From Saccostrea cucullata (lineage: Eukaryota), in assembly GCF_032062105.1 (NCBI RefSeq), contig NW_026929714.1:310001-374000 (forward strand): a DNA stretch of 64,000 nucleotides, given 5' to 3'. Both the position numbers and the translations under genes were made by a program. This document shows positions 9,101-63,865 of the stretch, piece after piece; positions within the stretch are counted from its first letter, which is position 1; the number at the start of each line of letters is the position of its first letter. The notes beneath the pieces were generated by a model. That model ran no database searches, had not been told where the DNA came from, and worked only from the letters and a program-made list of their open reading frames with translations.

Positions 9101-10474
9101 TAAAGTAAGCTATACCAGATTAGTATCTTTAATCAACATAAGCCTAAGTAGACCTCGTATATATCGTATTATAACTGAATATCGGACAGTTGTTTCTCAT
9201 GATGTTGTCACGCGACATGATGCATGCTTTGTAAGAGTGAAAGCGTACACTGACTTTACATTTCGCAACGCAGCTGATGGTGTTCGAATTATAGCAGCGA
9301 CAAGAACTAAAAATGGAGGGCCATTTAGAGGGAAAATGTCCATGATAACGAACAATAATGTTAATAGTGGGATTTTGTGCATGCCGATATTTTGTAATTC
9401 TGATGTGTACCTCGCTGCAGAGAAAAATGGAAAATATTACGCTTCAGACAATCATATTTTACCCTCCGTAGCTGAGTCAGTGAACGTTGCAAATGGTACA
9501 CAAGTCAAACTTAATTCAGATTATGTCAATCGGGAAGGACCAGTTTTCCTTTATCAAAGACGACCACAATGTGAAGATAACGCATTTTCTAGCTTTGTGT
9601 TTCAGTTTGCCCCTCTCTTAAAGGAAGGCGAACGTAATTCGTTGTCTGGAGATAACGTACATAATCAAATAAATTCTTGGTATACCGAACCTTCAACTAG
9701 TCCCTTCAGACGAACATGCTTCATGAAAGTGAAAGTAGTGGTATGTAATCATTTTATTGTTTATTGTATGCAATTGTACCTAAAAATGCTTCTTTTAAGA
9801 AAATTAAAATCATCCTCTGAAACTATTTCAAGTGAAAAAAATGTGTAATTATATTAATAATTTCAAAGTTTCATATTTCTTTTAGTCCAATGAACATACT
9901 CTGCGGGCAATAGGAGTCAGTAGGATGGAATATGTAAGCAATGTACCTTTCTTTGGAACTTTTCAAGCACCAATTATATGGGATGAAACTACAAATAATA
10001 GGAGAGAAAAAGCTGCTTGCATAGAATTTCGATGTCCTGGAAGACTCATTGATGGCACCAACGTAATCAATAACATAGCCACACTTCTGAGGGTACAAAT
10101 TCTGAGTCAAGAAGGTCATGTTTGCAATATTACGTAAGAATTTACTTTATTTTAATCATAATTTCAAAAATGTGATTAGAAATCCTTAATGTGTGAGAAA
10201 CATGAAAATTTTATAATAAATTCTAAAAACTTTTTTTTTCAGAAACGTGGCAAGTGGACTTAATATTACTCGTACTTCAAGCATACTTGGTGGAGGTTTT
10301 GAGTTTCGGGCAGATCCAAACGACAATTACGGCGTCGGAATGGGAGTATTCATCCGAACGTTTCCCTTTGAAACTGCTAGATCTACCTGTCGCACTGGCT
10401 TAGACTCAACAAATATTAGCCCAATTATGAAGCCCAATTCAAATCCAGCAGTCGAATTGGAATGCATAATCTAA
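188..10474 (+). CDS. CILP-like (cartilage intermediate layer protein family) protein, copy 1, 1064 aa; exons 188-377, 3409-3447, 3645-3821, 5913-6227, 6773-6881, 6988-7139, 8008-9740, 9886-10133, 10243-10474
   Basis: Nine exons with GT-AG boundaries and matching phases join into one 3195-nt ORF. Motifs: hydrophobic anchor [30 protein letters not shown]; TSP1 ([28 protein letters not shown]); Ig ([12 protein letters not shown]...WFKD...DAGAYYC); CILP-type [17 protein letters not shown]...SCKC, LETFGM, GKW; RKRR (9009-9020); CFVRVKAY; CIEFRC. Copy 2 has identical exon sizes. Confidence 0.88.
631..2364. mobile_element. Unclassified about 575-bp element in three copies (direct, direct, inverted) in intron 1 of copy 1
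   Basis: Units 631-1211, 1209-1783 and inverted 1790-2364. Each has a terminal hairpin of about 165 bp (ATATTTAAGCATTGAATT...AATTCAATGCTTATAT). Absent from the matching site in copy 2 (about 34500). Confidence 0.75.
2601..2990. mobile_element. Degenerate non-autonomous Helentron-type element (paralogous remnant at about 34740-35090)
   Basis: TTTTTGTCCCCC...GAGGGAT end hairpin, TCCG/TCTG microsatellite, AAGGTCAAAAGTCAAGGTC satellite-like unit; same layout as 28763-29140. Confidence 0.5.
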
Positions 10475-10798
10475 CAAAGATTTATAATCATTGCTTTTAT
10501 TATTTTCTTTGATAATGTATTTTAATCACCTTTTATGATGTCAGTTTTATTAATCATGTTAATGGTGTTTCTAATTTGACCATTTAATTCCGTCATTTGT
10601 TAAGCAATATTTGTGACCAAATCAAGGACAGACAAACTAATTTTTAAACATATATATACATGTCTTAAATATTGTTCAATATGCTGCTACCATTATGTTC
10701 ATGTTTTATGTTTGTAAGCTAGTAAAATGTCTATTAAATATAAGCCATTCAAAATAAGTCTTTCTAAAAAAAACTTATGAATGTTATTTATTCCTTCA

Positions 10799-12458
10799 TC
10801 AGGTACATTTTTATGTCATTGCAATTCCCACTTCCGGGTTCATTACATAATTGCTTTCCAATGCATTCTTCCCTGTGTAACAACTAAACTGAGCATTCAT
10901 TTTCTTATCCCGATACACTCCGACATTTGGGCCATAATTACTGTCAGGGATAAAAGTTCCAATGAAGGGAGAGTCTGTGGTATTTATGTTAGATTTGGTC
11001 TTTAGTTCATCCGAAAGCGATCTGGAAAAAAATCAAACATTGCCTATCTCGAGCGCACTAAATAACATTAAGAAGTAAGGTATATGAAATAGAAAAACGT
11101 CACGTATTGTCATAATAAAATACTTACATTAAGCTGCATGTTGAACCTGGCACTTTAGATATATATGCAGTTAAAATGTTAAAAATAAAAAAAATTATTG
11201 TTAGATGAGTCATACATGGGACATCTAAACTCAACGCAAACTGCTCGTTTGCCATGCCTGTTTCCTTTTAGCGGTGCGCTGAATGTTCCAAACCAAAAAC
11301 CTGTTTCTTCGCTATAACTTTTACCGACCGTTCCCGTGGACACAAGATTTGTCTGAAATAAAACATAATATTTTTTTGCAAACCACCTTTATCATGTTTA
11401 TCGAAAATTAAAAAAAAAATATCTCGTTTTGCGAAATTTCTTAAAAGAATTAATGGTCTATATCTCCATATCAATTACTGTATATTAATCGTATTTTTGC
11501 TTGATAGAAAGTATACAATTGTAAACTTAAATAAGAGGTACTGTATGCAATGAGTAATGATGCACTCCCATCTGGTTACAATGACAAAGTCGGTATTTCT
11601 CCCTGGCAGATCCGAAAATGTAAAGGTCCCATCAAATTTAATTCAGTATAGGATTAACGGATAAAAGATGGACACTCTTAAGCGCAACACACTGTCGGAC
11701 GGATCAACGAATGGACGACAGTATAGACGGAAGGACATCCCGATTACTTTATATACGTAACGCTTTTGCTTTTCAATCGGGGAGGATTGACTTGATACAG
11801 CACCTCAATCCAAATAAGAAAAAAAAAGTATGTGTAAATTTAATGACTTCACCTTCACGACAACTCGTTTGCATTATATTGACGTCTTATTCTAGTTTAC
11901 TTTGACTGAATGGCTACTTGTAGTTCAGAAAAGAGAAAGTGCAGAGTAATCCTTAACATAATTACCGACGAAGGATTTTATACACAAACCTTTCGCACAA
12001 GGAGGAAAGCTTCATCATATTGGTATTGTAAAAATAAAAATACAAATTGCGGCAATTATCGCTATTAAAAAAAAACATTTTTAATTTTTTGTCCTGGAAT
12101 TGAAGTAAAAACATGTACACTAAATATCATGACAATGCTGAAATTTTACCTTTATTTGAATTTTCACAAAGCAAGCTTCTTGAATGAACGCTGGATACTA
12201 AGAAGTACCAAAATCGTATTCTTTTGCATCAGGATTTCTTGTTAGTTTTCCCGAGAGACCTTGGAAATGAAAAGAAAAATATTGTCGTTTTGTGTTTTGT
12301 TCGGCACACTTTTCATCATTTGTGAAAATCGAACCATTTGTGTTGAGGATTGCAAATTTAATTTGTTCAAAATCTATGTTGATTTCCTCTCGGTATTCCC
12401 TAACAGTATATATAAATTTTGGTAAAATATTTTTTTTCTTGAAGCGGTAAGTGCTTTT
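10799..12458 (-). pseudogene. Pseudogene copy of the stand-alone CILP C-terminal gene (remnant exons about 12458-12150, 11352-11128, 11021-10799)
   Basis: Clear paralog of 51845-56127. Lesions: TGG>TAG at 12198-12200 (SWYP), a net +7-nt frameshift in the middle exon, and TAC>TAA just before the last Cys. The 5' half of exon 2 and exon 1 are not visible and are replaced by transposon sequence from about 12460. Confidence 0.85.
11531..11790. mobile_element. Degenerate Helentron-type non-autonomous element (paralogous copy at about 53543-53960)
   Basis: ATAAGAGGTACTGT start, GGAC/GACG microsatellite, 3' GC hairpin remnant; similar to 16036-16335. Confidence 0.5.
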
Positions 12459-16035: not shown

Positions 16036-16335
16036 AACTAGAGGTATTGTGAGCAATTATCTCACTAAATGATACCCCCGTCTCCCATATGAATATATTG
16101 ACACTGTCCATGTTTAGCTATGAGAAACCCAAAATATGTGTCGGATCAGAGAGTAAAATAGGAGGTGCACAATTGCAATATGTAAAAAAAAAATCCATGA
16201 AAGTTTCAACAAATTTCATTCAGTGGTATGAGAGGAGTTGCGGATAAGAAACGGGTATCCCAAAGCGTAACAGACGGAAGGTCAGGCATAACGATTACTC
16301 TATACCCTCCTGCTTTTCAAGCGGGGGTATAAAAA
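16036..16335. mobile_element. Non-autonomous Helentron-type element nested in the long-TIR element
   Basis: AACTAGAGGTATTGTGAGC start, GACGGA motif, terminal hairpin TATACCCTCC...GCGGGGGTATAAAAA. Confidence 0.55.
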
Positions 16336-26299: not shown

Positions 26300-27016
26300 A
26301 TTACGTTATTCTAAAGAAATTCCTTTGCCGTAGCATATAATAATTTGTACACAGATTATTAAGACAAATGACTTTCTATAAATTTAATCAATGATTGAAT
26401 GATGAAGGAAGGCAGATGGTTAAAATGACACTTGTCATGTTGCCCAATGAGAGCAAGTTTGAAAAGATACGTGTTATAAAATTAGCAATTAGCTATCAGA
26501 GACATCAAATTTTCACTTTGAAAAATAGTTGAATATTTGAACAAATAATATGATTATTAAATACCTAAGACATCGATTACTTTAGATTCTAAACATATTA
26601 GATATGATAAAAAGGAGACACCAATTCTCAATCCACCTTGAATAAACGTCTCTCCCGAGACAGAAGTTTTGTGTTTTAATGGTCGCCATGCTTATTTTTT
26701 GAAAGGATGTTCTTATCCACCCATTATGTTGCCGAGATTTGACCATTTCTGACAAATGAACTGTTCTTGTTATAAAATTTAACTTACAGGGAAATAAATA
26801 TAAAACTCAGAAAAATCTTAAATCTTTTGTGACAAAACGCTACCGAGGGGGTCACGTGACCGCCAATATCACGTGATTCGTGCATGCGCAGAACGGTGGC
26901 TGATATGCATTAAAATCGGAGAGGACTAATTTAAAATATAATCAACACTGAAACCAAATATTGTTTCTTTTATGGAATTTATTCAATTAGTTTGCGAACT
27001 TTTTGATCACCCCTCG
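26300..27016 (+). mobile_element. Truncated degenerate mariner-like element (same family as 52556-53526, opposite orientation)
   Basis: Ends GCGAACTTTTTGATCACCCCTCG|TA. Body is a diverged reverse complement of about 52556-53290. Left end not found. Confidence 0.65.
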
Positions 27017-27727
27017 TATTTGTAGGCAGATAAAAATGAATTTAATCAATCACTGCACTTTGCATTATACACTGCAACTAACTGCTTAATTTAAGTTTAT
27101 ATTGAAAAATCTTTTGCATTTTATGAATTTAATTTTTTAATTATACGGTGTATATTATTAATTGAATAATTGGTAATACTGTTTGTATCAAATTTCTGAA
27201 TTGCTGCATTTTGAATGATTGTCATAAATTTGAATTTCAGTTGTCAAGATACAAGACATATTAAGAACTCTTTTTTTTAATGTAATCAAGACCCATGTCA
27301 TGTTTAATTTACATTGGTTAAATATCTTAATATATGTTCGTCAATAACTCTTAGATGAAATAAGATTTTTAATATATTTTTTCGTGAAATGTTATTACAA
27401 TATATACGTTGTGATATTATACCCAAACAAATTTACTTCAAATCTGTGTTTGCGCACCTTTAAAAGTTAAAAAAAATGTTACCACAAAAAAGTGATGACC
27501 TTTATTTGACAAGTATTTCATTAGTACTAAGATGCTTGAACATTATAAAACCTTTTCATAAGTTAAATGAATGCAAAATCAAAAAATATCCCCCTTCAAG
27601 GTAACAAAATATTTATTGAAATTACATAAATTAGATTTAAGGATTTAAATGTATAACAGGGCACTTCCGGTAAAAATGACGGCATTTGCCGATGAATGCC
27701 GATGTCGTAGCACTGTTAATGCCTTAA

Positions 27728-34063: not shown

Positions 34064-37000
34064 ATGAGTTCTAGCGTAAAATTCAATTCTTTTGACGATA
34101 GATATGTCCACACAACTGATGAGCAACCAACGATTATTGCTGTCTCATCTGGAATAGCAACCAAAAAGATTGCATTAATCTTTGGTGCTATTGTCGTTGT
34201 TGGAATCATTGCTACAGTTGGGGTTGTTCTTGGTGTCGTTATTCTGAAGAAAGGTAATAATATGAAATATGTAATACATACTTTTCATCATATACAACGT
34301 AAATATTTATCAACGCTCATTTCAATTTGGATGTTTTTATGGAAATTTTACATCTAAAATAAATCAAAGTTTTCATGTATATACAAAAAATATTTAATAT
34401 TTTAAATAAATAAATAGAAAAACAAATCATTCATAGTTGATAATACTCGAAAAATCATTTGCAAATTATGTGTTTATATTAATATAAAAATATGTATATA
34501 TAATAATATCAACTTGTGCAGAGGACCGCTTAGCTAGGGTTTTATACTAAGGGTAATATGTTCCCAGATTTTCCTGGATTAACTATATATTTATCAAGGT
34601 CTCCTGGCGGATTTGATCGATTGACAGGGATCGATGCTTACTCCTCCTAAGGAACTCATTCCTCCTGTCATGTTTCCACTGGTCTGGGTGCTTGTCTTGT
34701 CTAAGATCCATATGATCTACAGGATTTCTGTGATTGGTTTCTGTCCATCTATTCTGTCCGTCTATTCGTTCTTCCGTCTTTATCTGTGTTTCTGTATGTC
34801 TGTAATACTTTAGTTTCCTGGCAATTTCCCGAAAAGCCTTTGAGCTTTTGCAATGACATAAAAAAATAAACTAACGCGCTATGACCTGTGGAAGACCTCT
34901 TTTGATTTTAAGGTCAAAAGTCAAAGTCTTAAATAAAAAAAAATATTTTACATTTTCGTTTCCAAGCGTTTTTTCGAGAAGCCTTTATCAGTGTCGTAAA
35001 TTTATATATTCGTGTGTGTAGAAACTTTTTATATTCGGGCGATATCTCAAGAAGGCTTTGAGTTTTGGCAATTTAGATTTATACCATAACTTTTGATGAC
35101 CCCACCCGCCTTTCTTTAAGTGCCTTCCCTCGAACCCTCCCTAGATCCGGGCATGCTCTTCTTTTCTCCTTAATCGGGGCCACAAATTCTCTGAATAAGT
35201 ATCGTCAAAATCTTGTTTGAATACGTTCAACAAAGAAGATATGGACACTTTACTAAGATTTTCTTAAAATTTGCTATACCTACAATTAATCATTCATAAA
35301 TTTTTAAGGCACTCATTCTTTAAAGCTGTATATATACAAGTTGTGTTTTCGTTTATGTGCACATCTATACTTTGTTGATGCATAAGTGAAACTCGAGTTA
35401 CATTTTTCAAGAAAATATTTTACTCATGAGTACTTAAAGAAATTTCTTGTGTTCATATTACGAATAATATGTAATAATTACCGGTACGTGTGTATATCTA
35501 ATTGTATATTATTTTCGTTCTGAAGACAATAAAGGAAATGACCAGCCACCCGCAGTTATAAACGGTAAATATACATTTACTACTAACTCTTCAATTGAAT
35601 TCCTGTGTGAATTCACACAAAACAGTGTTTATTTTTTCCGTGTATAAAAAGTTGAGATACATGTATTAGATAATTTGCATATTCTGATTAAGAATAAAAA
35701 ATACATGTAGATATTTGAAATATATTTAAACATAAGACATACAATTTTCTTTTAAGGACCAGTAGATGGGAAATGGACTTACTGGGATTCGTGGTCAGAT
35801 TGCACTGTTACATGCAGCGGGGGAACACAAAGGCGCACCCGTAGCTGTACTTCTCCCCCACCTATGTTTGGAGGGAAGTCCTGTGTAGGAAATTCAGAAG
35901 AAATCAGACAATGCTCAACTTGGAATTGTCCAGGTAAGTATGGAGGGCCAAAACTTTTCAAAACTTTTCTAAACAAACTACTAAAAATAAGAATCACTGT
36001 TTTGATTTTTTTATACTAAAAGTCACATTCTTTAAAAGGCCTTGCGTCCTGCTCAGAGCAGGTGAAACATTCTTTTTTATTTTCAGGATGTTGGTTTTAT
36101 TTTTCAAAATAGGATAGAAATCATGACTTTTGAGGTATTCAATAGATGTTTAATTTTGCTTATTTTTCATAATTATGAAATCCTTAATTTCTTTGTTTTG
36201 CGGAGATTCTATTTGAAAAAAAGATCTTATTTTGAAAAAAAGTTAAAAAAAAGAATAGAATCACAGATTTCAGTACCTCATCTTTTCCTATAACAGGAAT
36301 AGGACTATTCATAGGAGTAACTAGTTATTATGAATTATTCATCCAAAATTACATCTATTTAATGGTTATTAATTAGAGGATCGATAAAAGAGTTATATTG
36401 TTACCCTGAACATTTTTTTGTCCTGTTGCACGAAAGATACAGAGCTTAAAAAAAAATATAAATTGCCATTACTTGCATGTTCTAGACTAGTCATTCAAAT
36501 AATTATTTTACTTCTTTTTCTGAAGAAATTTACAGATTTTAAATTTACCAAAAACTCATCTTTAGCTGGTATTTTCCCTACTTTTTCTAAAGTATTTCTT
36601 TCTCTGAACTGGCTTAAATTGCAACGTGCTACCGTTACAGGCAACACAATTCACAGGAGTTCTGGTTGGTAAAAGGGCAAATAAAGCAGAATTCCCTTTC
36701 ACTCAAAATAATTCAATTTTAAAACTCTATTCAATTTGTGAATATATAATTTTCAGATTATTTTAAGGTTCATAATCTATACAGGCAACTAAGCCACATA
36801 TGATTCTCATATGAGAATCATATGATTCTCATATGATTGTTTCATATGAGAATCATAGAAAAAGGGCATCATATGTGAATCATATGAAGCAAATCATATG
36901 ATTTACATATGATCCACATATGTGAATCATATGAAAATAACTACATATGATTTTCATATGAATGATTTAAGTGTGTTTCAAGCCATTTACATATGAGAAT

Positions 37001-46000: not shown

Positions 46001-49000
46001 GGTGCGGCGACTACCATAATCGCACGTTGTATAAAATCCGATATTTTGAAAAGTATGAATCATGTTGAATTGAAATTTTTAGGTCTGATTTGAAATAAAT
46101 GAAGATTTCATCATTAATAATTTTACTGTTTTACGTAGACGGGTAGGGATTTTATCGATGTTGTGACATTGCTTTTGGATTAACCCTCGTACATATGATT
46201 CTCATATGATCCACATATGATCTTCATATGAAAGGCATTGCATATGTGGATCATATGTGACTAAATTGCCTATGTATGGCTGTCCATTATTCCCGAGACA
46301 CGTCAAAAATAAAATTTATGAAGTACTAGTATATGAACGCCACCATAAATTCATTTAAAAAAAATCTCACATAAAGTTATTTCGAACTCCTTTCTACACA
46401 TGAGAAAAAAGAGCTCATTTTTGTCTGCAGGTTACTATTACCTTTTCACATAAAGGTATGATAATAAGAATTAATTTACATATCATTACAGACTTAATAA
46501 TCATCATTTTATTACCATAGTTAAAAAAAGACTTTAAAGTAAGTCACTGCACCATGCTAAAATAATGGAAGGCATGTGCCGGAAAAAGTTCACAGAACAT
46601 TTTCTTCAAGAACTCTGTGAAGCTTATTGAGGAGAAAAAAAGAAATATTTTATTGAATTTTGATAAGAAAGAAAAATAAGTATAATTTTACAGAATAATT
46701 TCAGATTGTGCCAGGACGTGTCCTAATGGCGGAAGCCTCAGTCATAACTGTGAAATATGTGAATGTCCTTCATCAACGATCATTGGCAGAGTGACGGACC
46801 GCACTAACTTCACACTTGATGGGGTTGAAATATTCTTGTCCTATCGTCCATGGAGTCCTATTGCTACAACAAATGTTCGTGGTGTATACACTGTATCAAA
46901 TATATGTTTCAACTCTACTTCCATCTTTGCAAAGAAAGATGGTTATTCAGTAGTATATGTTACTCCGAGAAGACTGAATACGACTCACTGGGAAGCAAAC
47001 GTTGAAATAAGAAAATTAGGTTCGTATTGAGATGATTATACTTGAATATGATAATGAAATAACCTTATCAAATGAGATTCAAGTTGGAAAAGTCAAGAAA
47101 AATTCAAAGGATGTCATTTTAAAATTCTCAAAAAATGCTCGAAAATTCAGAAAAGAGGAACAAATTTTCTCCGTGTTCTCTTATTTTTAAATGTTGGAAA
47201 TAATGAGAAAAAGACGTGACAAGTTTGAAAATATTCATTTCCGGAATACAACTGTGAAATCTCCATTTTCAAGTTCCTCTAATGATACTTAAAACATTTT
47301 CCCTTATTTATCTGTAGGTCAAGGCATTTTCATCAAAGTAAGATTATCCTGTGATATGCAAATTTATTGATTTTAACTTTTTACGTATGAATGTGAAAAT
47401 TGGTCACATTTTAAGTAATTATATGTATTGTATTTTAAAAGAGTCGAACTTTATTTTTAAATAAACTTGGATCTCTGTAAAGATTTAATTGTGTACCGGA
47501 ATGCCGTTATGAAGGCATTGCATTGAATATTTTGTTGCTCACTTTTGTAAGCATAAACATTTCATCTTCAGAAAAACCTTGGATTTCCCGAAAGCCAGTT
47601 TCCAAAATCCGATTTGTTGGCCAATCAGCCACGTTTTGCTGTCAGGCAAACGGTTTTCCCATACCCCGAGACTTTCTATGGTAAATCATTTTGATAAGAT
47701 TTTGTCTTTAAAGAAACTTTTTCTTTAAATATATATATTACTTTAACTGCAGAAATTTAGAAAAAAATCTCTATCTAAAAATAGGTTCAAAGATAATAAC
47801 ATATTACCAGGAAGGGGAACAAATGGAAATTTGGTTGTTAGTTCAATTCAGAAATCAGACGCTGGGACATACTATTGTAAAGCTACCACGGAAGCAGGAT
47901 CAGTAACATCTGAACGCATAACCTTAGATGTAAGAGGTATGAACTTGTATGATTTACACGTTTTCAACAAATTTTGATTTAATAAAAATAATTTGATAAT
48001 TGATTTTCTCAGCGCAGTATTTGCAGAAAAGAAGTTTTTACCAATTGCGAACTAAAATTTCTCTTCGCCTAACACGTGAATTGGAATTTGGATTAAGTAT
48101 TCATAATAATTATTAAAAAGAAAAAACAATATGCTTTTATTGGTTTCTAGAAGTGAAAACAATATTGGTGACGGAAAAGACAAGAGAGAAATTGCATTTT
48201 AAACAAGGAAAAAAATGTAATTTTCCTTAAACAAATAACAAAGAACTCTTTCAATAGAATTTGTCCCTGTATTTTTTTTTTGTCTAAAATTTAGAAGTGA
48301 TGTAAAAAATTAAAATTCATCCTCTCTCAATTCTTGAAATTACATGTGGTTAAACATGCAAACGTTTCTCCAATATGACTTCCTAAACTTTAATTGTGAC
48401 GTCATGAACGTGTGCATATTCCAGTACATGTACTTTCTTTTAAAGTTACAGAAGACATCAATTTCAGTTGAATTTTCTTTCAAGAAACATACTGCGAATG
48501 CATCCCTACAAAGACTTTGAGATATGTGATTTTTCAGAGCATTTTAGACAATATATCCAAAAGTTTAAGTAGGCGAGGGCTGCGGACACTGTTTTCTTAA
48601 AGAAAATGACAACATGAGTCAATTTCTGCTAAAAACTTAGAAATGATCAAATTATGGATGTCATTTTTCCAGAATGACCATCTTTCATGCTAAATGTTTT
48701 AACGATTTATCATATTCATCTACTTAACTCATGTTTTAGCCAATTTCATAACTTTTTAAGAACATTGATTTTAGGGCACAAGAAAGACCAAATCACACCT
48801 TCGTCAATAAAATTTATTTTGTCCTAAGTGTAAGAACAGCATTAAAACATCTTTTTAGATACCTTTGATGATACATGCAACTCAGTGCCAACAGTAAACG
48901 AAGAAACTCTGCCAACTGGTTGCTATTTTAATGATAACGGCAACAGAAAGTCAGTAGTTGACGTCGGAAAGTGTCCAAATAGTATATGCATTACAAGAGC

Positions 49001-51328
49001 CCTTGTTGACAACGGTACATGCGAAGACTGGTGGCCTTCTCACTGCTGTGACGTATCCCAAACAGAGACAATTGAAATAGAATGCTCTGGAGGGTTTACC
49101 TATCCGATCACCAAAGTTATTTCTTGCAAATGTCGCGAAAACGTGATAAACACTCTTCTGAATGGAATGGCGTATGGTGTTCAGAACGGTTCTAGAATTC
49201 CTTTTGTTAGAGGAGAGGTCATGATAGACGGTGAAGTGAAAGCTTTTACCTCAGCGACAGGATATTTTTCTGTCAATATAGTAGGAGAGGTTACTCGTGT
49301 TGTATTAAACTTGCGTAACGATAGATCTGGCCAACTTTTAGATACAACAAGGGTAATTGATATTTCATATGGCACAACGACCTCCATCGATATTCACGTT
49401 CCACTAAAACCGGCACCAAAACCTTTCAACACACGTATCGGTTTTGATATACCCCTCGGAACGAAGAATGGAAACTCAGCAACTACGACGTTATCCATTG
49501 CAGAAGATAGTGTTGTTGATGGAAATGGCAATGCTTTTGAAGGGACAGCTAATGCACGAGTTCATTACGTTGATCCACGGAATTTGGAAGATCTTGATGA
49601 GATGTACGGAGAGCTAAGATTTACAGACGAAGAGGGAGAGTCTATTGACTTAGAAACATTTGGTATGCTTCAGTTATCCGTAGAAGACAATTCTGGAACA
49701 CCTTTATATGTCAATGGAAAAATCAAAATTTCGCTTGATCCAGCACCTTTTAATTTGTCAAACGAAGGTGCAAATCTGCATTTGTATAGCTTAGACGTAA
49801 ACACAGGAAAGTGGGTTGATCAAGGTCTAATGGCGTACAATTCTTCCAGTGGTTCAAATCGTAAACGAAGGTCAACTGGAGGAAATCTAGAGGGTATTGT
49901 CATAGATGCTATTCCAGTTATAAAACAAACAGAGGAAGTTGATAAAATTATTCAAGTAAGCAATACCAGATTAGTATCTTCTATCAATATAAACAAAGAT
50001 AGACCTCGAATATATCGTATTATAACTGAATATGGGACTGTTGTTACTCGTGAGGATGTCACATTACAAGATGCTTGCTTTGTAAGAGTGAAGGCGTACA
50101 CTGACTTTACATTTCGCAATGTAGCTAGTGGTGTTCGAATTACAGCAGCGACAAGAACTAAAAATGGTGGGCCGTTTAGGGGACAAATGTCAATGTTTAC
50201 GAACATTAACGTTAATAATGGAATTTTATGTATGCCGATATTTTGTAATTCTGATGTGTACCTCTTTGCAGAGAAAAACGGAAAATATTACGCTTCAGAC
50301 AATCATATTTTACCCTCCGTAGCTGAGTTTGTGAACGTTGCAAATGGAACACAGGTCAAACTCAATTCAGATTATGTTAATCGGGAAGGACCAGTTTTCC
50401 TTTATCAAAGACGACCACAATGTGAAGATAACGCATTCTCTAGCTTTGTGTTTCAGTTTGCCCCTCTCTTGAAGGAAGGTGAACGTAAGTCATTGTCTAA
50501 AGATAACGTACATAATCAAATAAATTCCTGGTATACCGAACCTCCAACTAGTGCCTTCAGACGAACATGTTTCATGAAAGTGAAGGTAGTGGTAAGTATT
50601 TTTTCTTATTGTTTATTGTATGCAATAACAATTTACTCAGGAAAATAAAAATAATCCTCTTAAACCGTTTCAACTAAAAAAATAATGTGTATTTATAGTA
50701 ATAATTTAAAGATTTTCTATTTCTATAAAATATTTAAACAGAATCATATCTCTTTTAGTCCAATGAACATACTCTCCAGGCAATAGGAGTCAGTAAGATG
50801 GAATATGTTAGCAATATACCCTTTTTTGGAACTTTTCAAGCACCAATTATATGGGATGAAACTACAAATAATAGGAGAGAAAAAGCTGCTTGCATAGAAT
50901 TTCGATGTCCTGGAAGACTCATTGATGGCACCAACGTAATCAATAACATAGCCACACTTCTGAGGGTACAGATTCTGAGTCAAGAAGGTCACGTTTGCAA
51001 TATTACGTAAGATTTTACTTTATTTCAATTATACATGTTATATCAACATTGTGATTAGAAATCTTATAATAAATCCTATAAACTTATTTTTTTCAGAAAC
51101 GTGGCAAGTGGACTTAATATTACTCGTATTCCAAGCGTACTTGGTGAAGGTTTTGAGTTTCGGGCAGACCCAAACGACAATTACGGCGCAGGAATGGGTG
51201 TATTCATCCGAACGTTTCCATTTGAAACTGCAAGAGCTACATGTCGCACTGGCTTAGACTCGCCTAATATTAGCCCAATTATGAAGCCCAATTCAAATCC
51301 AGCAGTCGAATTTGAATGCTTTATCTAA
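34064..51328 (+). CDS. CILP-like protein, copy 2, 1064 aa; exons 34064-34253, 35526-35564, 35757-35933, 46705-47019, 47572-47680, 47785-47936, 48859-50591, 50759-51006, 51097-51328
   Basis: Same nine exon lengths (190, 39, 177, 315, 109, 152, 1733, 248, 232) and splice sites as copy 1, with an open frame. RKRR at 49860-49871. Intron 3 is enlarged by a 9.5-kb insertion. Confidence 0.88.
40459..41172. mobile_element. Possible short TIR element (CAGGGATGGATCCAG...CTGGATCCGCCAATG)
   Basis: Imperfect 15-bp inverted ends with adjacent G and C runs. TSD not clear. Confidence 0.4.
42076..42161. repeat. Small hairpin MITE-like repeat
   Basis: TGTCATCTTTGCTAGCCTAGGGTTTCCGATCCGAAAGC / GCTTTCGGATTGGAAGCCCTTGGCTTGCGAAGATGACA. 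Confidence 0.6.
42441..42978. mobile_element. Foldback MITE (about 260-bp arms, short spacer), TAATCTC termini, 9-10-bp TSD
   Basis: Almost entirely palindromic; flanked by CATTGTATTC and CATTGTATTT. Confidence 0.85.
45018..46189 (+). mobile_element. Internally deleted mariner element nested in the right subterminal array of the 9.5-kb element
   Basis: TA|CGAGGGTTGATCCAAAA...TTTTGGATTAACCCTCG|TA. Transposase N-terminal remnant (KSPVET; RWFQRF; [31 protein letters not shown]). No catalytic domain seen. Confidence 0.85.
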
Positions 51329-51462: not shown

Positions 51463-51593
51463 NNNNNNNNNNNNNNNNNNNNNNNNNNNNNNNNNNNNNN
51501 NNNNNNNNNNNNNNNNNNNNNNNNNNNNNNNNNNNNNNNNNNNNNNNNNNNNNNNNNNNNNNNNNNNNNNNNNNNNNNNNNNNNNNNNNNNNN
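51463..51593. other. Assembly gap (N run)
   Basis: 131 N. Confidence 0.99.
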
Positions 51594-51788
51594 ATGCTGC
51601 TACTTTTATGTACATGTTTTTTATGTTTGTAAACTAGTAAAATGTGTATTGAAAATAATCAAGTAAAATTTCCACCAACAATACCTTATTAATTTAATGA
51701 TACTCTGAAAATAATTTAATTTAAGAAATTTTAATTGAGAAATAAATCAAAAGAAGATGTTATGCCTTCTCTTTCCCATTAAGTTTTT

Positions 51789-51822
<34 letters not shown>

Positions 51823-51844
51823 TATGAGTGTTTTAATTCCCTCC

Positions 51845-54800
51845 TCAGGTACATTTGTATGTTATTGCAATTCCAACTTCCGGGTTCATTACATAATTGC
51901 TTTCCAGTGCATTCTTCCCTGTGTAGCAACTGTACTGAGCATTCATTTTCTTATCCCGATACACTCCGACATTTGGTCCATAATTACTGTCAGGGATAAA
52001 AGTTCCATTGAATGAAGAGTCTGTGGCATTTATGTTAGATTTTGTCTTTAATTCACCTGAAAGCGATCTAGAAAAAAACCCACACATTGTCTATCTCAAA
52101 CACACTGAATAACATAAAAAAGTAAGGTACATGTATATGACATAGAAAATTGGAAGGTATTGTCATAATAAAATACTTGCATTAAGCTGCATGTTGAACC
52201 TGGCACTTTAGATATATCTGCAGTTAAAATGGTGGATATTTTATTGTTAGATGAGTCATACACGGGACATCTAAACTCAACGCAAGCTGCTCGTCTGCCT
52301 TGCCTGTTTCCTTTTAGTGGTGCGATGAATGTTCCAAACCAAAAACCCGTTTCCTCGCTATAACTTTTACCGATAATTCCCGTGGACACAAGATTTGTCT
52401 AAAACAAAGATAAATGTTTTCAGTAAACAACTTTGATTGAAAACACAAAACATTAATAATTTCCCGTTTTGCTAGATTTATTAGAAGAATTAAAGAAAAA
52501 CATCTTCATATCAATAACTGGTATATAATTAGTATTTTTGTCCATAAAAAGTATACGAGGGGTGATCAAAAAGTTTGCGAACAAACTGATTTACTTCAAT
52601 AAAACAAGTAAAAATCAGGTTTCAGTGTTCATAATTTTTTAAAGTAGCCCTCTTCGACTTTAATGCATATGTGCCGCCGTTCTGCCCATGCGAATCACGT
52701 GGTCAAGGCAGTCACATGACGTGCTCTGAAGCACTCTGTCCATAGACGCTGAAATATTTTCCCTAGTCTTATATTTCTTACCATGGAAGTATTTCTTTTT
52801 TACAACAAGAACAGTCCATTTGTCAGAAGTGACCAAATCTTTGAAATAGGATGGTTGGATAAGAATATTATTTCCCAAAGAGATTCGAGTATAATGACAA
52901 TCACAACCTGATTCCTCTGTCTTAGGAACGCCGTTTATCCGATATGGATAATATTTTGTAGTATAAAGGCCTTCTTTTCATCATATTTAATGTTTCAAGT
53001 CTAAAATAAACGATGTTTATGGATTTAAAATTAATGTCATTATAAAGGTATTCAACTATTTTTCTAGCTGTAACGGTGCAATCTTTCATTGTCCAATTGT
53101 CCAACAAAGGTTACATTTCTTCTCCAGCTTGCCTTCTCTGGCTTCAAAACAAACGTCATTTTTATCCATCTCCCTCCCTTCACTTTAACAGTAAATCCAA
53201 GTTATAATTAAACGTGTGGAAAGTCTATTGTCTTCATAAACACTGTACAAATTATTACAAGATACTTCAAAGGAATTCCCAAGTTATATTTTAAACTTTA
53301 GAGTCGTATGTTGTTCGAGTAAGACTGTGACAACCATTTTTCGTCACGAGTCTCCTACATATTGACGTCATTTTCACACTGTGACGTCACATTGATGGAG
53401 AAAATCATTACTTTCATATGCTATATATAGAACGTGCATGTGTATAGGTGTTCCAAACTTCATTCCGATCTGAATTATAATTTTGTAAATATAGAGATAG
53501 TTGACGAACTTTTTTATTACCCATCGTACCCTTGTGAATCGGAATAAGAGGTACTGTGAGCAATGATACATTCTTCAATATGGTTACAGTGGCAAAGTCT
53601 TTGTTTTGCTCTGGAAGACCCGAAATCAGTGTATAATCAAAAAGTAAAATTGGAGGTACACGTACCCTTTAAGTATATTGAAAGAATGGCAGTGTCCATG
53701 TTTCTTTTGGAAACTCAAACATATTTGTCCGATCAAAAAGTAAAATAGAGGTGTGCAATGTCACTTTGTGAAGAAAAGGTCTCATAAGGTCTCATAAAAT
53801 TTCATTCAGTGGTATACGATTTACGGATAAAAGATTGGTACCCCAAAGCGAAACAATCGGGTGTATGGACATACAGATAAACGGATGGACGCACGTACAG
53901 AGGGACGGACATCCCGATTTCTATACCCCCTCTTGCTTTTCAATCGGGGGGAGGGGACAAAAAGAAGCTAGACCCCACTCTTAGAGCAAACCTTTAGTAA
54001 AGCTTTGCTAAGACTCCCCAAACCGTTAAAAGATTTTAAAATATAATGATTTAATATGTACGTAATTTATCTAAATCATATACAGGGGCGTCCAGACTAA
54101 ATATATGAAACATTTTTTGTGATATAACATTATTTCGTTAATAACATGTCGGCCAATCATATTTTTAGATGTTGCACATAACACTTTTTGTACATTAAAT
54201 GAAGAATATATACAATCATGGAATTTGTGTATATTTCAATTTGTGTTTATAAGGACCAGTGACAAGTGATACTGGTCAAAGTCGTTATCATTGCTCTCAT
54301 GATTTGGCCAATATCACCTGACACTAATTCTTTTAAAAAACTATAAATAAATGTCTTAAACGTTCATAGAAGTCCGTAGTAGTATTTTACGTATATAACA
54401 ATTACATTGAATACTCAGACACATGCAATCCTAAATGAACTCGACTGTCATTACATAACAATTGTAAAACATGGGTATGATATATACTAAATCTAGTACA
54501 GCCTAACGGTGATTCGTGAAACATCATTTGGCGATTCTTTCGCGTCAATATCACAAAAGGATGAATATATCGTGACTTGCTTTCAACTTATGATAACTAG
54601 GTAAACAATCTTTTTATATGATTTATAAAGTCATTGTTTCCTTTTTTATGCATGCCAACTGATCGTCAAGTTGTGAACACAAATGTTCTATGAAAAAATC
54701 AAAGCATTACGTGTATTTGAAACATTTTATTTAAAATCTTCATTTACTGTTATAACTCTATTCAGTATCGTAATCTAAACAAGTCTATAATACATTTAAA

Positions 54801-56127
54801 TGTTTTGGATTTTTACGATTAATTTGAAGCAACGTAATAAATCAAGTGGTTTACACACCTATAATCTAGCACTAATTAATCCCAAGACATTTAACAAAAT
54901 ACATTTATATATATTTCTCGTAAACACTGTAATTACGTTATTATTTCAATCGAAAATAATTAAGAGAATAATTTAAGCTCAGCTGAACAGAAGGTTCTTC
55001 AGGACTTGGGGAAGGATAAAACCACTTATATTTTTTTATTTATTTATTTATTGGTTTCTCGGTTTCTCTGACGAAAGTGCTCAGATGCTTGATCTGGCCA
55101 ATGGACCTCTTGCAATTATAAATTCGGACTCGTTACAGCACTCAAATAAGAAGAAAACAATTATGAAATAATGAATTTCGAAATATTTAACAATGTGTAA
55201 ATTATAGGACACTCCCCTTCAGGACAGGTCGTTTGCATTAACTCGGCGTCTTATTCCAAATGACGTCATGAATTGCTACTTGTTGTTCCGAGAAGAGGAA
55301 GCACAAAGTCATTCTTAACTAACCTACGAAGGATTTAATACATAAACCGTTCGCAAATCACATATTCGCGTTGTGAAAATAAAAAAAAACCAAATTGTGA
55401 CAATTATCTGAATTAAAAGAATATCTGTTTCAATCTTAAGTTTTACCTGTATTTGAATTTTCACAAAGCAAGCTTCTTGAATGAACGTTGGATACCAAGA
55501 AGTAAGAAAATCGTATTCTTCTGCACTAGGATTTGTTGTTAGTTTTCCCGAAAGTCCTTGAAAATTAAAAGAAAAATATTGTCGTTTTACATTCTGTTCG
55601 TCACAATTTTCATCATTTCTAAACATTGGACCATTTGTGTTGAGGAGTGCGATTTTAATTTGTTCAGAATCTAGGATGATTTCCTCTCGGTATTCTGTTA
55701 CAGTATATATAAATTGTGGTGAAATATTCTGTTTTTCTTTTGGGGCAGCAAGTGCTTTTTCATCTTCAGTTTCTGCTATGATCTTTATTTTTCCATCACA
55801 TGGAGCTCGGATGCAAACACTGCCTTTTTCGTCGGATTTATACATACTGTATACCACGTTTTCCCCATTTTCCGACGAAATTATGTAGACAGGTACAGAA
55901 GGAGTTGTTGCTGTAAAATGGGGATCGTTGTATACCTTGACTCCAGCAAAGCAAGGTGCTGAAGTATTGGAAAAATATTTTATAAGGAAATAAAATCATA
56001 AGATATAGATATAATCAAATCGTTAATGTGCATTCAAAGGAATAAAACAATCAAACCTTAAATTAAATGTACCTTGTAATCCAAAATCACAACTGAAAAT
56101 AATTGTTATTATAAAAAGCATCAGCAT
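51845..56127 (-). CDS. Secreted stand-alone CILP C-terminal-region protein, about 335 aa; exons 56127-56073, 55958-55447, 52398-52181, 52067-51845
   Basis: Exon 1 encodes a signal-peptide-like MLMLFIITIIFSCDFGLQ. The rest (APCFAGVKVY...GSVCIRAPC...NGPMF...SWYP...ACFVKIQIQ / FGTFIAP...AACVEFRCP / NYGPNVGVY...SCYTG...YKCT*) aligns colinearly with the post-RKRR part of the long genes. Its two 3' intron positions and phases match the long genes. The intron 3 donor is GC in this model. Confidence 0.8.
52556..53526 (-). mobile_element. Degenerate mariner-like element in intron 2 of the stand-alone gene
   Basis: TA-flanked imperfect TIRs (CGAGGGGTGATCAAAAAGTT). ILIQPSYFKDLVTSDKW resembles the mariner HPPYSPDLAPSD motif. 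Empty site in unit 1 near 11513. Confidence 0.75.
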
Positions 56128-57226
56128 TTTTAATATCTCTGTAGGTTTCCGGCACATCAAATATATGTGCAAAGCATACTAGTAATCTATTATAAATGTA
56201 CAAAAATACTTTATTCAAGCTGTTGAATAAAAGGTAAACAGAAAACCCAACTCTCAAATCAGAAAAATCTAATATACGATGGAAACAATGTATTTGTACA
56301 ACAAACTGATCATTCTCTAAATTTATTTTAGAGATAAGATTTAAACCGGTTTAATTTGAAAATAAGATGAAAAAGTTTGTACAAGTGTATTCATATGTTT
56401 GTCCAAAACTGTCATACAATTCGCTCTTAATAGCGAATGCTTATGTCTAGTGTCCGCCCAGGCCTTGGTGTCGACCCCAAGCAGAAGAATGCAGTCACAA
56501 AATATAAAAAAAATACCATCGCAGTAAAATTTTCCTATTTTTAAGTTAAAAAAATTCAATAATTTTTAGCATTTTTTTTTACATATGTTCAAGTATGTTT
56601 AAGTTAAGATCTTTGTAAAAGAGAAATAGAATAATGCAGTAACCATCCATTGATTGTCGCTTTTTCATGCACTAACATTATAGTCTATGTTTTTTCTTCA
56701 TTTTTGCCTTGTGCTTTTCATGGAATAAGAGGGTAGATTTTTTTAATAAAATGTGAACACTAAACAGCCGTGGAAAAAATTGACCGAAATTACCAGGGGT
56801 AGTATAAAATACATCCAAATATTATAAAAATTCATGAAGCTTTAAAAACTATCAAAATAGTAAAATTGTTAAAAGTTGGGTTAGGTGCCAAAAATAAGCC
56901 TTCAACTTTAACCGATTACAAACTACATATAAATATATTTTGTGCGAAGCAACGCCATGACTGAATAGGCAAGGAAAATATATCAAAAATATAGCAAATG
57001 TATTTTTGAAAAAATAGATAAAGGACCCCATTTACAAAAGATAAATGAACCAATTTACAATAGTATTAAATTTGATTATAATTATTCAAACTTAAAGTAA
57101 GTAAAGCCCTTTGACAAACTGTCACAGACGCAACATTTGAATGAAATTAAGTTTTACATAATAAACATTCTTTTAATGTATTATTAAAATATCTATCATG
57201 TTATTTTATTCATTTTTGTAGATATA

Positions 57227-63633: not shown

Positions 63634-63865
63634 TTATTGACAGGTAAAACCCAAAGCTACTCCAACTTCTGGCTCCATTTCATACACGCTTTCAAAGGCG
63701 TTTCGTCCGGTATAACAACTGAAACGCGCAATATCTTGAGGCTCTTTGACGTTTTTATATATTCCAACATTGGGACCATAGTTGCTGTTGGACGTCAGAT
63801 TTCCCCAAAAGGAAGTGCCCGTCGTATCCAAGATCCCTTTCTGAGCAAGATCGTTTGATGTGAAT
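63634..63865 (-). CDS. Last exon of a third CILP C-terminal-type paralog (gene continues beyond the window)
   Basis: AG acceptor, phase-2 start, 232 nt. Encodes FTSNDLAQKGILDTTGTSFWGNLTSNSNYGPNVGIYK...FSCYTGRNAFESVYEMEPEVGVALGFTCQ*, homologous to the last exon at 51845-52067. Confidence 0.8.

What the first reader, a model, noticed from the sequence alone, without database searches (positions are those of the whole stretch)
51845..56127. A gene encoding only the post-furin C-terminal region of a CILP-like protein, with its own signal peptide
Seen: a 4-exon - strand gene whose mature sequence starts at APCFAGVKVY, the counterpart of [10 protein letters not shown] downstream of RKRR in the neighbouring long genes. 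It then follows them motif by motif (G.LC.P.FC, GP.F...C, SWY, CF.K, FGTF.AP, AAC.EFRCP, NYG...GV, C.TG, terminal Cys). Its last two introns sit at the same positions and phases as introns 7 and 8 of the long genes. Known: vertebrate CILP1 is a precursor cut at a furin site into an N-terminal chain and a C-terminal chain homologous to porcine NTPPHase. Inference: an old partial duplication gained a new signal-peptide exon, giving a processing-independent, genetically pre-cut C-terminal chain. That would imply the C-terminal region is an autonomous functional unit. I do not know of a described family like this, but cannot exclude one.
Basis: partly seen in the sequence, partly recalled or inferred. 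Interest (0 to 1): 0.85.

Follow-up and report, generated by a model that had tools for sequence, protein, structure and literature searches.

The report
Stand-alone CILP C-terminal-domain gene, bivalve
This intact four-exon gene encodes only the last two domains of a CILP-like matrix protein behind its own signal peptide; oysters, a scallop and clams have the same short gene under purifying selection, so the poorly understood CILP C-terminal half probably works on its own.

Summary
On the minus strand, exons 56127-56073, 55958-55447, 52398-52181 and 52067-51845 give an open 335-codon frame: a hydrophobic leader, then the CILP_8th and CILP_C regions. Each coding exon matches the corresponding exon of the neighbouring long CILP-like gene (E 1e-4, 1e-12, 2e-6). 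A profile of short genes against long C-terminal regions gives hhalign probability 99.8%, E 1.8e-28.

The last two introns share position and phase with those of the long gene. Intron 3 needs a GC donor. The Ostrea edulis orthologue has the same GC donor and exon sizes of 55/518/218/223 nt.

The family is old and constrained:
- Short orthologues exist in O. edulis, Crassostrea virginica, Mizuhopecten and Mactra, all named "uncharacterized".
- dN/dS against O. edulis is 0.20, and all 10 mature cysteines are kept.
- The tail-to-tail position beside a long CILP-like gene is conserved.
- A second short subtype (B) lies just upstream, and a decayed copy of the gene lies at 10766-12458.

Caveats:
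- No RNA run was listed, so expression is untested.
- The mature chain starts 66 residues after the furin site of the long gene, at the domain boundary.
- The predicted fold is two beta-sandwiches, not an enzyme fold.

It is a new architectural variant of a known family, of moderate interest.

The parts
56073..56127 (-). Gene A exon 1: ATG at 56127, an 18-codon hydrophobic leader plus 1 nt, GT donor, phase 1
   Evidence: The best 9-residue Kyte-Doolittle mean is 3.29. O. edulis has the same 55-nt phase-1 first exon. In O. edulis stop codons lie just upstream of the equivalent ATG.
56159..56166 (-). TATA-like ATATATTT at -39..-32 of the ATG (candidate core promoter; inferred)
   Evidence: O. 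edulis has TATAAAA at -42..-36 of its ATG. An upstream in-frame ATG at 56157 would then lie before the likely transcription start.
55447..55958 (-). Gene A exon 2: CILP_8th-like domain, from 2 residues before the first Cys to C-F-V-K plus 4 residues; phase-0 donor
   Evidence: Pfam CILP_8th covers profile positions 2-164 of 168 but below threshold (E 0.087). BLASTP to the long-gene counterpart gives E 1e-4. Identity to O. edulis P0001 is 59%.
52399..55446 (-). Intron 2, 3048 nt, carrying dispersed repeats
   Evidence: Parts of it match 16099-16272 and 26318-27019 of the window. The same intron is 159 nt in O. edulis and 91 nt in gene B.
52181..52398 (-). Gene A exon 3: first half of CILP_C (F-G-T-F...A-A-C-V-E-F-R-C-P); ends in phase 2 at a GC donor (52180-52179)
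   Evidence: BLASTP to long-gene exon 50759-51006 gives E 1e-12. O. edulis has the same 218-nt exon and GCAAGT donor.
51845..52067 (-). Gene A exon 4: second half of CILP_C (N-Y-G...G-V-Y, C-Y-T-G, terminal Cys), TGA at 51847-51845
   Evidence: Pfam CILP_C profile positions 135-200 of 200, E 0.0019. BLASTP to the last exon of the long gene gives E 2e-6. O. edulis has the same 223-nt exon.
48885..51328 (+). 3' part of long CILP-like gene 2, convergent with gene A: large exon open from 48885 and ending at 50591, with RKRR at 49860-49871 and D-A-C-F at 50070; then exons 50759-51006 and 51097-51328
   Evidence: Pfam CILP_5th, CILP, CILP_8th and CILP_C. Splice model in frame. Coordinates.
10766..12458 (-). 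Decayed copy of gene A behind long gene 1. It lacks exon 1 and the 5' part of exon 2. TAG replaces the W of S-W-Y, TAA sits near the end, and exon 3 has an indel.
   Evidence: 73-84% DNA identity to gene A, 2 in-frame stops.
63634..63865 (-). Last exon of gene B, the second short CILP-C-only subtype (33% identical to A). Its other exons lie beyond the window end.
   Evidence: Its leader exon is at L010:3130-3082 and is kept in paralogue L011.

Best explanation
Gene A is a functional, independently transcribed paralogue of the CILP-like genes. It encodes only their last two domains (CILP_8th and CILP_C) behind its own short signal peptide.

Shown: an intact frame; collinear homology to the C-terminal part of the long gene; shared intron positions and phases; orthologues with the same exon structure and the same neighbour in other bivalves; purifying selection.

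Inferred: the leader sends the protein into the secretory pathway and is removed. The mature protein of about 317 residues folds into two disulfide-stabilised, N-glycosylated beta-sandwich domains, the first transthyretin/CarboxypepD_reg-like. It then acts outside the cell as a non-enzymatic matrix-binding or ligand-binding module. This is the same module that the long genes can release only by furin cleavage.

The family most likely arose from an old partial duplication of the 3' part of a long gene that acquired a phase-1 leader exon. It later split into subtypes A and B and has kept duplicating and decaying inside this cluster.
For: Gene model and frame.

Homology to long gene 2: exon-wise E 1e-4, 1e-12 and 2e-6. 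hhalign of short-family against long-family profiles gives probability 99.8%, E 1.8e-28 over 312 columns, from the first Cys to the terminal Cys.

Orthologues found with exon 2 alone and by name: O. edulis XP_056002602.1 and XP_048750714.2 (337 aa), C. virginica XP_022301716.1 (336 aa), M. yessoensis XP_021340055.1 (414 aa), Mactra antiquata KAL4225097.1 (386 aa), and a partial Ruditapes model. In all of them the domain starts 25-80 residues from the N-terminus, behind a hydrophobic leader. The three full-length orthologues scanned (P0001, P0008, P0012) pass the Pfam gathering score for CILP_C at 32-56 bits against 27, and carry no TSP1, Ig or CILP_5th.

O. edulis locus: exons of 55/518/218/223 nt, phases 1/0/2, the same GC donor, lying tail-to-tail 1.2 kb from a 1063-aa TSP1-Ig-CILP gene.

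Selection: dN 0.27, dS 1.35, ratio 0.20 against O. edulis, with 10 of 10 mature cysteines conserved and 3 N-x-S/T sequons. B-subtype copies give ratios of 0.14-0.28. The duplicate at 10766-12458 collected two stops, an indel and a 5' truncation at dS of only about 0.2. That shows what happens to an unconstrained copy here.

No CILP N-terminal exon lies on the minus strand upstream of A or B, out to the contig end.

Fold, modelled on the O. edulis orthologue: pLDDT 81 for the whole protein and 86 for domain 2. Domain 1 matches transthyretin-like sandwiches such as teneurin, carboxypeptidase D and transthyretin at Z 6-8. Domain 2 gives only sandwich matches at Z up to 6.2. No alpha/beta hydrolase or phosphodiesterase fold appears.
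Against: There is no transcript evidence: no RNA run was listed for this genome, so the 5' end, the GC-AG splice and expression are unconfirmed here.

The window's own exons score below Pfam thresholds when searched one at a time. The joined product was not sent to any database tool.

The leader is short, has no basic n-region, and has no textbook -3/-1 cleavage site. No SignalP run was possible.

The fold matches are in the range that common sandwich arrangements give by chance (notes), so they exclude little beyond an obvious enzyme fold.

The tree does not resolve whether all short genes form one clade apart from long genes (41% of bootstrap trees).

The A-like copy on contig C21630 has only exons 1-2, and its dN/dS against gene A is 0.44. 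Some members of the family are therefore being lost.
Confidence: 0.82

Rival explanations
1. The gene is a non-functional relic: a 3' fragment of a duplicated long CILP-like gene that happens still to be open, with a fortuitous ATG exon in front.
For: The cluster does make such relics. The copy at 10766-12458 is truncated and carries stops. The C21630 copy lacks exons 3-4. No RNA evidence is available.
Against: 335 codons are open. dN/dS is 0.20 against O. edulis at dS 1.35, and all 10 cysteines are kept. Five other bivalve species have the same short architecture. O. edulis has the same 55-nt leader exon, phases, GC donor and neighbour.
Confidence: 0.05
2. Exons 2-4 are the 3' end of a long CILP-like gene on the minus strand whose N-terminal exons lie far upstream, and the 55-nt 'exon 1' is not used.
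For: In the long genes the same region is the end of a precursor of about 1000 residues. Introns here can exceed 10 kb.
Against: tblastn with a full-length annelid CILP-like protein finds N-terminal exons only on the plus strand. Between gene A and the contig end the minus strand holds only gene B, itself short. In the long genes the domain start lies inside one large exon, whereas here an acceptor sits 2 codons before the first Cys. The annotated O. edulis model starts at the same leader exon, with stops upstream.
Confidence: 0.04
3. The product is an enzyme, a secreted nucleotide pyrophosphohydrolase, as the old 'NTPPHase homologue' label of the CILP C-terminal chain suggests.
For: The CILP1 C-terminal chain is described as homologous to porcine NTPPHase (PMC5700204).
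Against: A 2026 review states that the C-terminal domain was later found to have no NPP activity (PMC12839030). The predicted fold is two beta-sandwiches with no match to phosphodiesterase or other catalytic folds. No Pfam enzyme family is hit.
Confidence: 0.04

Closest known systems
C-terminal chain of vertebrate CILP1/CILP2 (the 'NTPPHase-homologous' fragment released at a furin site)
   Same: It has the same two Pfam regions in the same order (CILP_8th then CILP_C), is extracellular, is cysteine-rich, and ends at a terminal Cys. In vertebrates this part becomes a free polypeptide (PMC5700204, PMC12839030).
   Different: Here the free chain is encoded by its own gene with its own leader, so no precursor, furin site, TSP1, Ig or CILP_5th is involved. 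It starts 66 residues after the position of the furin site.
Neighbouring long CILP-like genes of the same window (ending at 10474 and 51328, plus strand)
   Same: Collinear homology over the last ~330 residues, the same last two intron positions and phases, and a conserved cysteine pattern.
   Different: Only about 25% identity. The long genes add a first exon with a membrane-anchor-like segment, TSP1, Ig, CILP_5th, CILP and an RKRR site.
Unnamed bivalve proteins XP_056002602.1 / XP_048750714.2 (O. edulis), XP_022301716.1 (C. virginica), XP_021340055.1 (M. yessoensis), KAL4225097.1 (Mactra antiquata)
   Same: The same short architecture. The oyster proteins are orthologues (53-59% identity, clade support 99/100). 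O. edulis has the same exon structure, GC donor and neighbour.
   Different: They are database gene models labelled 'uncharacterized' or 'hypothetical'. No paper in the searched library mentions them or any mollusc CILP-like gene. The scallop, clam and subtype-B proteins keep 25-60 extra residues between the leader and the first Cys, which gene A lacks.
Transthyretin-like / CarboxypepD_reg-like beta-sandwich modules (teneurin TTR domain, carboxypeptidase D domain, CnaB pilin domains)
   Same: The predicted fold of domain 1 superposes on them at Z 6-8, rmsd 2.2-3.5 A, over 80-107 residues. ESM Atlas feature and shape searches point the same way.
   Different: There is no sequence relation, and the scores lie in the range of common arrangements. 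This shows what the domain looks like, not family membership or function.

Membership tests
CILP family, C-terminal region (Pfam PF23730 CILP_8th + PF23599 CILP_C) | Significant profile match to CILP_C | tested here: inconclusive
   The window exons searched singly give: exon 4 at 18 bits, E 0.0019, profile 135-200 of 200; exon 3 no hit. Both are below the 27-bit cut-off, as expected for half-domains. The full-length orthologues P0001, P0008 and P0012 pass at 32.3, 55.7 and 35.2 bits. The joined window product was not scanned.
CILP family, C-terminal region (Pfam PF23730 CILP_8th + PF23599 CILP_C) | Significant profile match to CILP_8th | tested here: inconclusive
   Exon 2 gives 13.3 bits, E 0.087, but spans profile positions 2-164 of 168. 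The related short protein P0007 passes at 32.9 bits, and the long annelid P0006 at 38.3 bits.
CILP family, C-terminal region (Pfam PF23730 CILP_8th + PF23599 CILP_C) | Homology to the C-terminal region of bona fide full-length CILP-like proteins | tested here: met
   hhalign of the short-family profile (including the window exons) against the long-family profile gives probability 99.8%, E 1.8e-28, over 312 columns. Exon-wise BLASTP gives E 1e-4, 1e-12 and 2e-6.
CILP family, C-terminal region (Pfam PF23730 CILP_8th + PF23599 CILP_C) | Shared gene structure with long family members | tested here: met
   There is a phase-0 intron after C-F-x-K plus 4 residues, and a phase-2 intron after C-x-x plus 2 nt, in gene A, gene B, long gene 2 and the O. 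edulis orthologue.
Full-length CILP precursor (vertebrate CILP1/CILP2 type) | TSP1 repeat, Ig domain, CILP_5th/CILP domains and a furin site upstream of the C-terminal region | tested here: not met
   None is encoded in gene A or on its strand upstream, and the orthologues lack them. It is therefore not a CILP precursor, only its C-terminal module.
Secreted protein with a cleavable signal peptide | N-terminal hydrophobic h-region followed by a cleavage site | tested here: inconclusive
   The hydrophobic core is at residues 2-11, with a 9-residue Kyte-Doolittle mean of 3.29. All orthologues also have hydrophobic N-termini. In the model of the orthologue pLDDT is below 50 for residues 5-15. No signal-peptide predictor was available, and the cleavage site is not typical.
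Nucleotide pyrophosphohydrolase (NTPPHase/NPP) | Catalytic fold and activity | tested here: not met
   The predicted fold is two beta-sandwiches with no NPP-like match. The literature reports no NPP activity for the CILP C-terminal domain (PMC12839030). Activity itself cannot be tested here.

The most novel reading that the evidence does not exclude
The locus encodes two routes to the same extracellular module. The first exon of the long genes looks like a type II signal anchor (34 cytoplasmic residues, then a 26-residue hydrophobic span). If so, their C-terminal chain would stay tethered to the cell until furin cuts at RKRR. The short genes A and B would deliver the same module constitutively and without a protease. 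The short paralogues would then be a natural 'uncoupling' of a shedding-controlled signal or matrix module. They would give a direct handle on the unknown function of the CILP C-terminal half.
Probability: 0.2. Interest if true: 0.6.

Novelty: new variant of a known kind. Interest (0 to 1): 0.42.

Why it matters
The function of the C-terminal half of CILP1/CILP2 is still open. It was named an NTPPHase homologue, was later reported to lack that activity, and is rarely studied apart from the N-terminal TGF-beta/IGF-binding half (PMC5700204, PMC12839030).

A gene family that encodes only this half has kept its exon structure, its cysteines and its neighbour across the bivalve lineages sampled here (oysters, a scallop, clams), under purifying selection. 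That is evolutionary evidence that the half is an autonomous functional unit. It also offers a small, naturally 'pre-cut' protein of about 320 residues to express, localise and knock down.

This is an architectural variant rather than a new kind of system. Domain-subset paralogues are common, and the orthologues are already in public databases without a name, so the interest is moderate.

Tried and rejected
1. My first splice models were wrong. GT donors only gave either a frameshift or a 325-aa model that skipped a conserved Cys. I replaced them with the GC-donor model after comparison with the oyster orthologue.

2. The word-indexed protein search was blank with exon 2 and with the C-terminal region of the annelid long protein. 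These blanks say little, because the exhaustive search found 13 relatives.

3. RNA evidence: none was listed for this stretch.

4. The PDB search by sequence found no match. The ESM Atlas search by features gave only sub-threshold CarboxypepD_reg leads. The Atlas search by shape gave TM below 0.4. Foldseek on the whole model and on domain 2 gave nothing convincing.

5. The Logan members of the oyster clusters (P0015, P0016, P0020) read into introns, so they are genomic and give no transcript evidence.

6. The tree cannot decide whether short genes have one origin.

7. A second candidate leader exon for gene B (L010:2590-2506) was rejected because its ATG is lost in paralogue L011.

8. Literature searches for mollusc or invertebrate CILP, and for the orthologues' locus names, found nothing relevant.

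I redid the step from references.

Those searches were run exon by exon, and the fold was modelled on the O. edulis orthologue. Joined sequences were used only inside local scripts, built from the stored window and loci.

Full report
**What is there**

Reading the minus strand of 51600-56400 gives a four-exon model.
- Exon 1, 56127-56073: ATG, 18 hydrophobic codons plus one base, GT donor.
- Exon 2, 55958-55447.
- Exon 3, 52398-52181.
- Exon 4, 52067-51845: ends in TGA.

Together these make 1008 nt, or 335 codons.

My first attempts with GT donors only failed. One lost the frame, and the other skipped a conserved cysteine. The homologous solution needs a GC donor, AT|GCAAGT, at 52180. Three observations support it:
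- The decayed paralogue in the same window has GTAAGT at exactly that place.
- Gene B and the long gene have phase-2 donors at the same codon position.
- The annotated Ostrea edulis orthologue is reproduced exactly only by exons of 55/518/218/223 nt with the same GCAAGT donor.

The window gene has exons of 55/512/218/223 nt.

**Is the resemblance to the long genes real?**

The convergent plus-strand neighbour is a CILP-like gene. Its exons carry Pfam CILP_5th, CILP, CILP_8th and CILP_C, plus Ig. An annelid full-length CILP-like protein (P0006) maps onto both long copies in the window, from the TSP1 exon onward.

The large exon carries RKRR at 49860-49871. D-A-C-F follows 66 residues later, at 50070.

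Searched by reference, each coding exon of gene A matches the corresponding exon of the long gene collinearly, at E 1e-4, 1e-12 and 2e-6. A profile of short genes against a profile of long C-terminal regions gives hhalign probability 99.8%, E 1.8e-28, over 312 columns from the first to the last cysteine.

The second intron of gene A follows C-F-x-K plus four residues in phase 0. The third follows C-x-x plus two bases in phase 2. The last two introns of the long gene sit at the same positions and phases. I could not confirm that these are introns 7 and 8, because I found eight exons by homology.

**It is a conserved family, not a local accident**

An exhaustive search with exon 2 alone found 13 relatives. 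Those with names are bivalve gene models in which the domain starts 25-80 residues from the N-terminus:
- O. edulis XP_056002602.1 and XP_048750714.2 (337 aa)
- C. virginica XP_022301716.1 (336 aa)
- Mizuhopecten yessoensis XP_021340055.1 (414 aa)
- Mactra antiquata KAL4225097.1 (386 aa)
- a partial Ruditapes model

The three full-length orthologues scanned (P0001, P0008, P0012) pass the Pfam cut-off for CILP_C, and none of them has TSP1, Ig or CILP_5th. The annelid 1071-aa protein has the whole set. The window's own exons are sub-threshold when scanned singly, as expected for pieces of domains.

In O. edulis the short gene lies tail-to-tail, 1.2 kb from a 1063-aa TSP1-Ig-CILP gene. Here the arrangement is the same: the long gene ends at 51328 and gene A ends at 51845.

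**Selection**

Against the O. edulis coding sequence, dN is 0.27 and dS is 1.35, a ratio of 0.20. All ten cysteines of the mature chain are conserved, and there are three N-x-S/T sequons.

The genome holds a second short subtype, B, about 33% identical to A. Its last exon is at 63634-63865 and the rest lies just beyond the window. It has its own 49-nt phase-1 leader exon, which is kept in a paralogue. Three B copies give dN/dS of 0.14-0.28.

The copy of A that follows long gene 1 (10766-12458) behaves differently. It has lost exon 1 and the 5' part of exon 2, and it carries a TAG, a TAA and an indel, at dS of only about 0.2 from gene A. An A-like copy on contig C21630 retains only exons 1-2. 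The cluster therefore makes and loses copies, and gene A is one that is kept.

**Is it a separate gene?**

Several points say yes:
- No CILP N-terminal exon lies on the minus strand between gene A and the end of the contig. Only gene B is there.
- In the long genes the domain start is inside one large exon. In A and B an acceptor sits just before it, and both leader exons are phase 1.
- A TATA-like ATATATTT lies at -39 to -32 of the ATG. O. edulis has TATAAAA at -42 to -36 and has stop codons just upstream of its ATG.
- The window has a further in-frame ATG at 56157, which would probably lie upstream of the transcription start.

No RNA run was listed for this stretch, so none of this is confirmed by transcripts.

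**How it probably works**

All short proteins begin with a hydrophobic segment.

An AlphaFold2 model of the O. edulis orthologue, built on a 21-row alignment that includes the window exons, has mean pLDDT 81. It shows a disordered leader followed by two beta-rich domains. A separate model of domain 2 reaches pLDDT 86.

Domain 1 superposes on transthyretin-like sandwiches (teneurin, carboxypeptidase D, transthyretin, CnaB pilin domains) at Z 6-8. ESM Atlas leads agree. Domain 2 matches only generic sandwiches, at Z up to 6.2. These scores are in the range of common arrangements and show no function. They do speak against a phosphodiesterase-type enzyme fold. That fits the statement that the CILP C-terminal domain has no NPP activity (PMC12839030).

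My best reading is a secreted, disulfide-bonded, glycosylated two-sandwich module that binds matrix or ligand. It is the same module that vertebrate CILP1/2 and the long bivalve genes release by furin cleavage (PMC5700204), but produced here without a precursor. The binding role is inference.

- The mature chain of gene A begins two residues before the first cysteine. That is 66 residues after the furin site of the long gene, so it lacks the linker.
- Subtype B and the scallop and clam proteins keep 25-60 residues before that cysteine. Gene A is thus the most trimmed form.
- The tree groups the window gene with the oyster orthologues (99/100) and groups A with B (87/94). It leaves the relation between short and long genes unresolved. 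One old origin is compatible with the data but not shown.
- The leader exon has no detectable similarity to the first exon of the long gene.

**Novelty**

No paper in the searchable library mentions CILP-like genes in molluscs or these loci. The orthologues are in public databases as unnamed models, and at least two already carry a Pfam CILP_C hit.

I rate this a new architectural variant of a known family. It is real and conserved, useful for the open question of what the CILP C-terminal half does, and not a new kind of system.

Noticed in passing
window 34064-34253 (unit 2) and 188-377 (unit 1), plus strand: The likely first exon of both long CILP-like genes encodes 34 polar residues, then a 26-residue hydrophobic span, then K-K-G. 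It ends in a phase-1 GT donor that joins in frame to the TSP1 exon at 35757. This looks like a type II signal anchor rather than a cleavable signal peptide, so furin cleavage at RKRR might shed the C-terminal chain from the cell surface. The block is 92% identical between the two units, against 74-83% in the flanks.
   Followed up: partly
window 103-20402 versus 33977-61955: There is a large segmental duplication. Each unit holds a long CILP-like gene followed by a convergent short gene. DNA identity is 73-92%. Unit 1 keeps an apparently open long gene but only the decayed short copy.
   Followed up: partly
window 63634-63865 and beyond (L010 = contig C11851:373001-381000): Gene B is a second short CILP-C-only subtype, 33% identical to A, with much shorter introns (about 91 nt and 597 nt after exons 2 and 3) and a 33-residue stretch between the leader and the first Cys. 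Three distinct copies exist in the genome (contigs C11851, C21630, C12735).
   Followed up: yes
contig C15268 (L002, L013, L016): This contig repeats the B, A and long-gene arrangement. Exon 2 of A is 100% identical, and B differs by dS 0.005. It is probably the other haplotype or a redundant contig rather than a paralogue.
   Followed up: partly
contig C21630 (L009, L011, L014): This is a paralogous segment with a B copy and an A-like copy. Its dS to the window genes is 0.12-0.20. The A-like copy keeps exons 1-2 open (88% amino-acid identity), but similarity stops before exon 3, and exons 3-4 were not found in the next 3 kb.
   Followed up: partly
window 52399-55446: Intron 2 of gene A is 3 kb, against 159 nt in O. 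edulis. It contains dispersed repeats that recur at 16099-16272 and 26318-27019.
   Followed up: no
window 51790-51826 and 51463-51593: A run of about 33 T (on the minus strand) starts 19 nt after the stop codon of gene A. A run of N (gap or mask, left untouched) lies between the 3' ends of the two convergent genes. The 3' UTRs and polyadenylation sites of both genes therefore cannot be read with confidence. ATTAAA sits at 51837-51832.
   Followed up: no
window 52180 versus 11128: The GC donor of intron 3 is shared with O. edulis, while the decayed paralogue has GT at the same site. The GC state is therefore old, and the pseudogene changed.
   Followed up: yes
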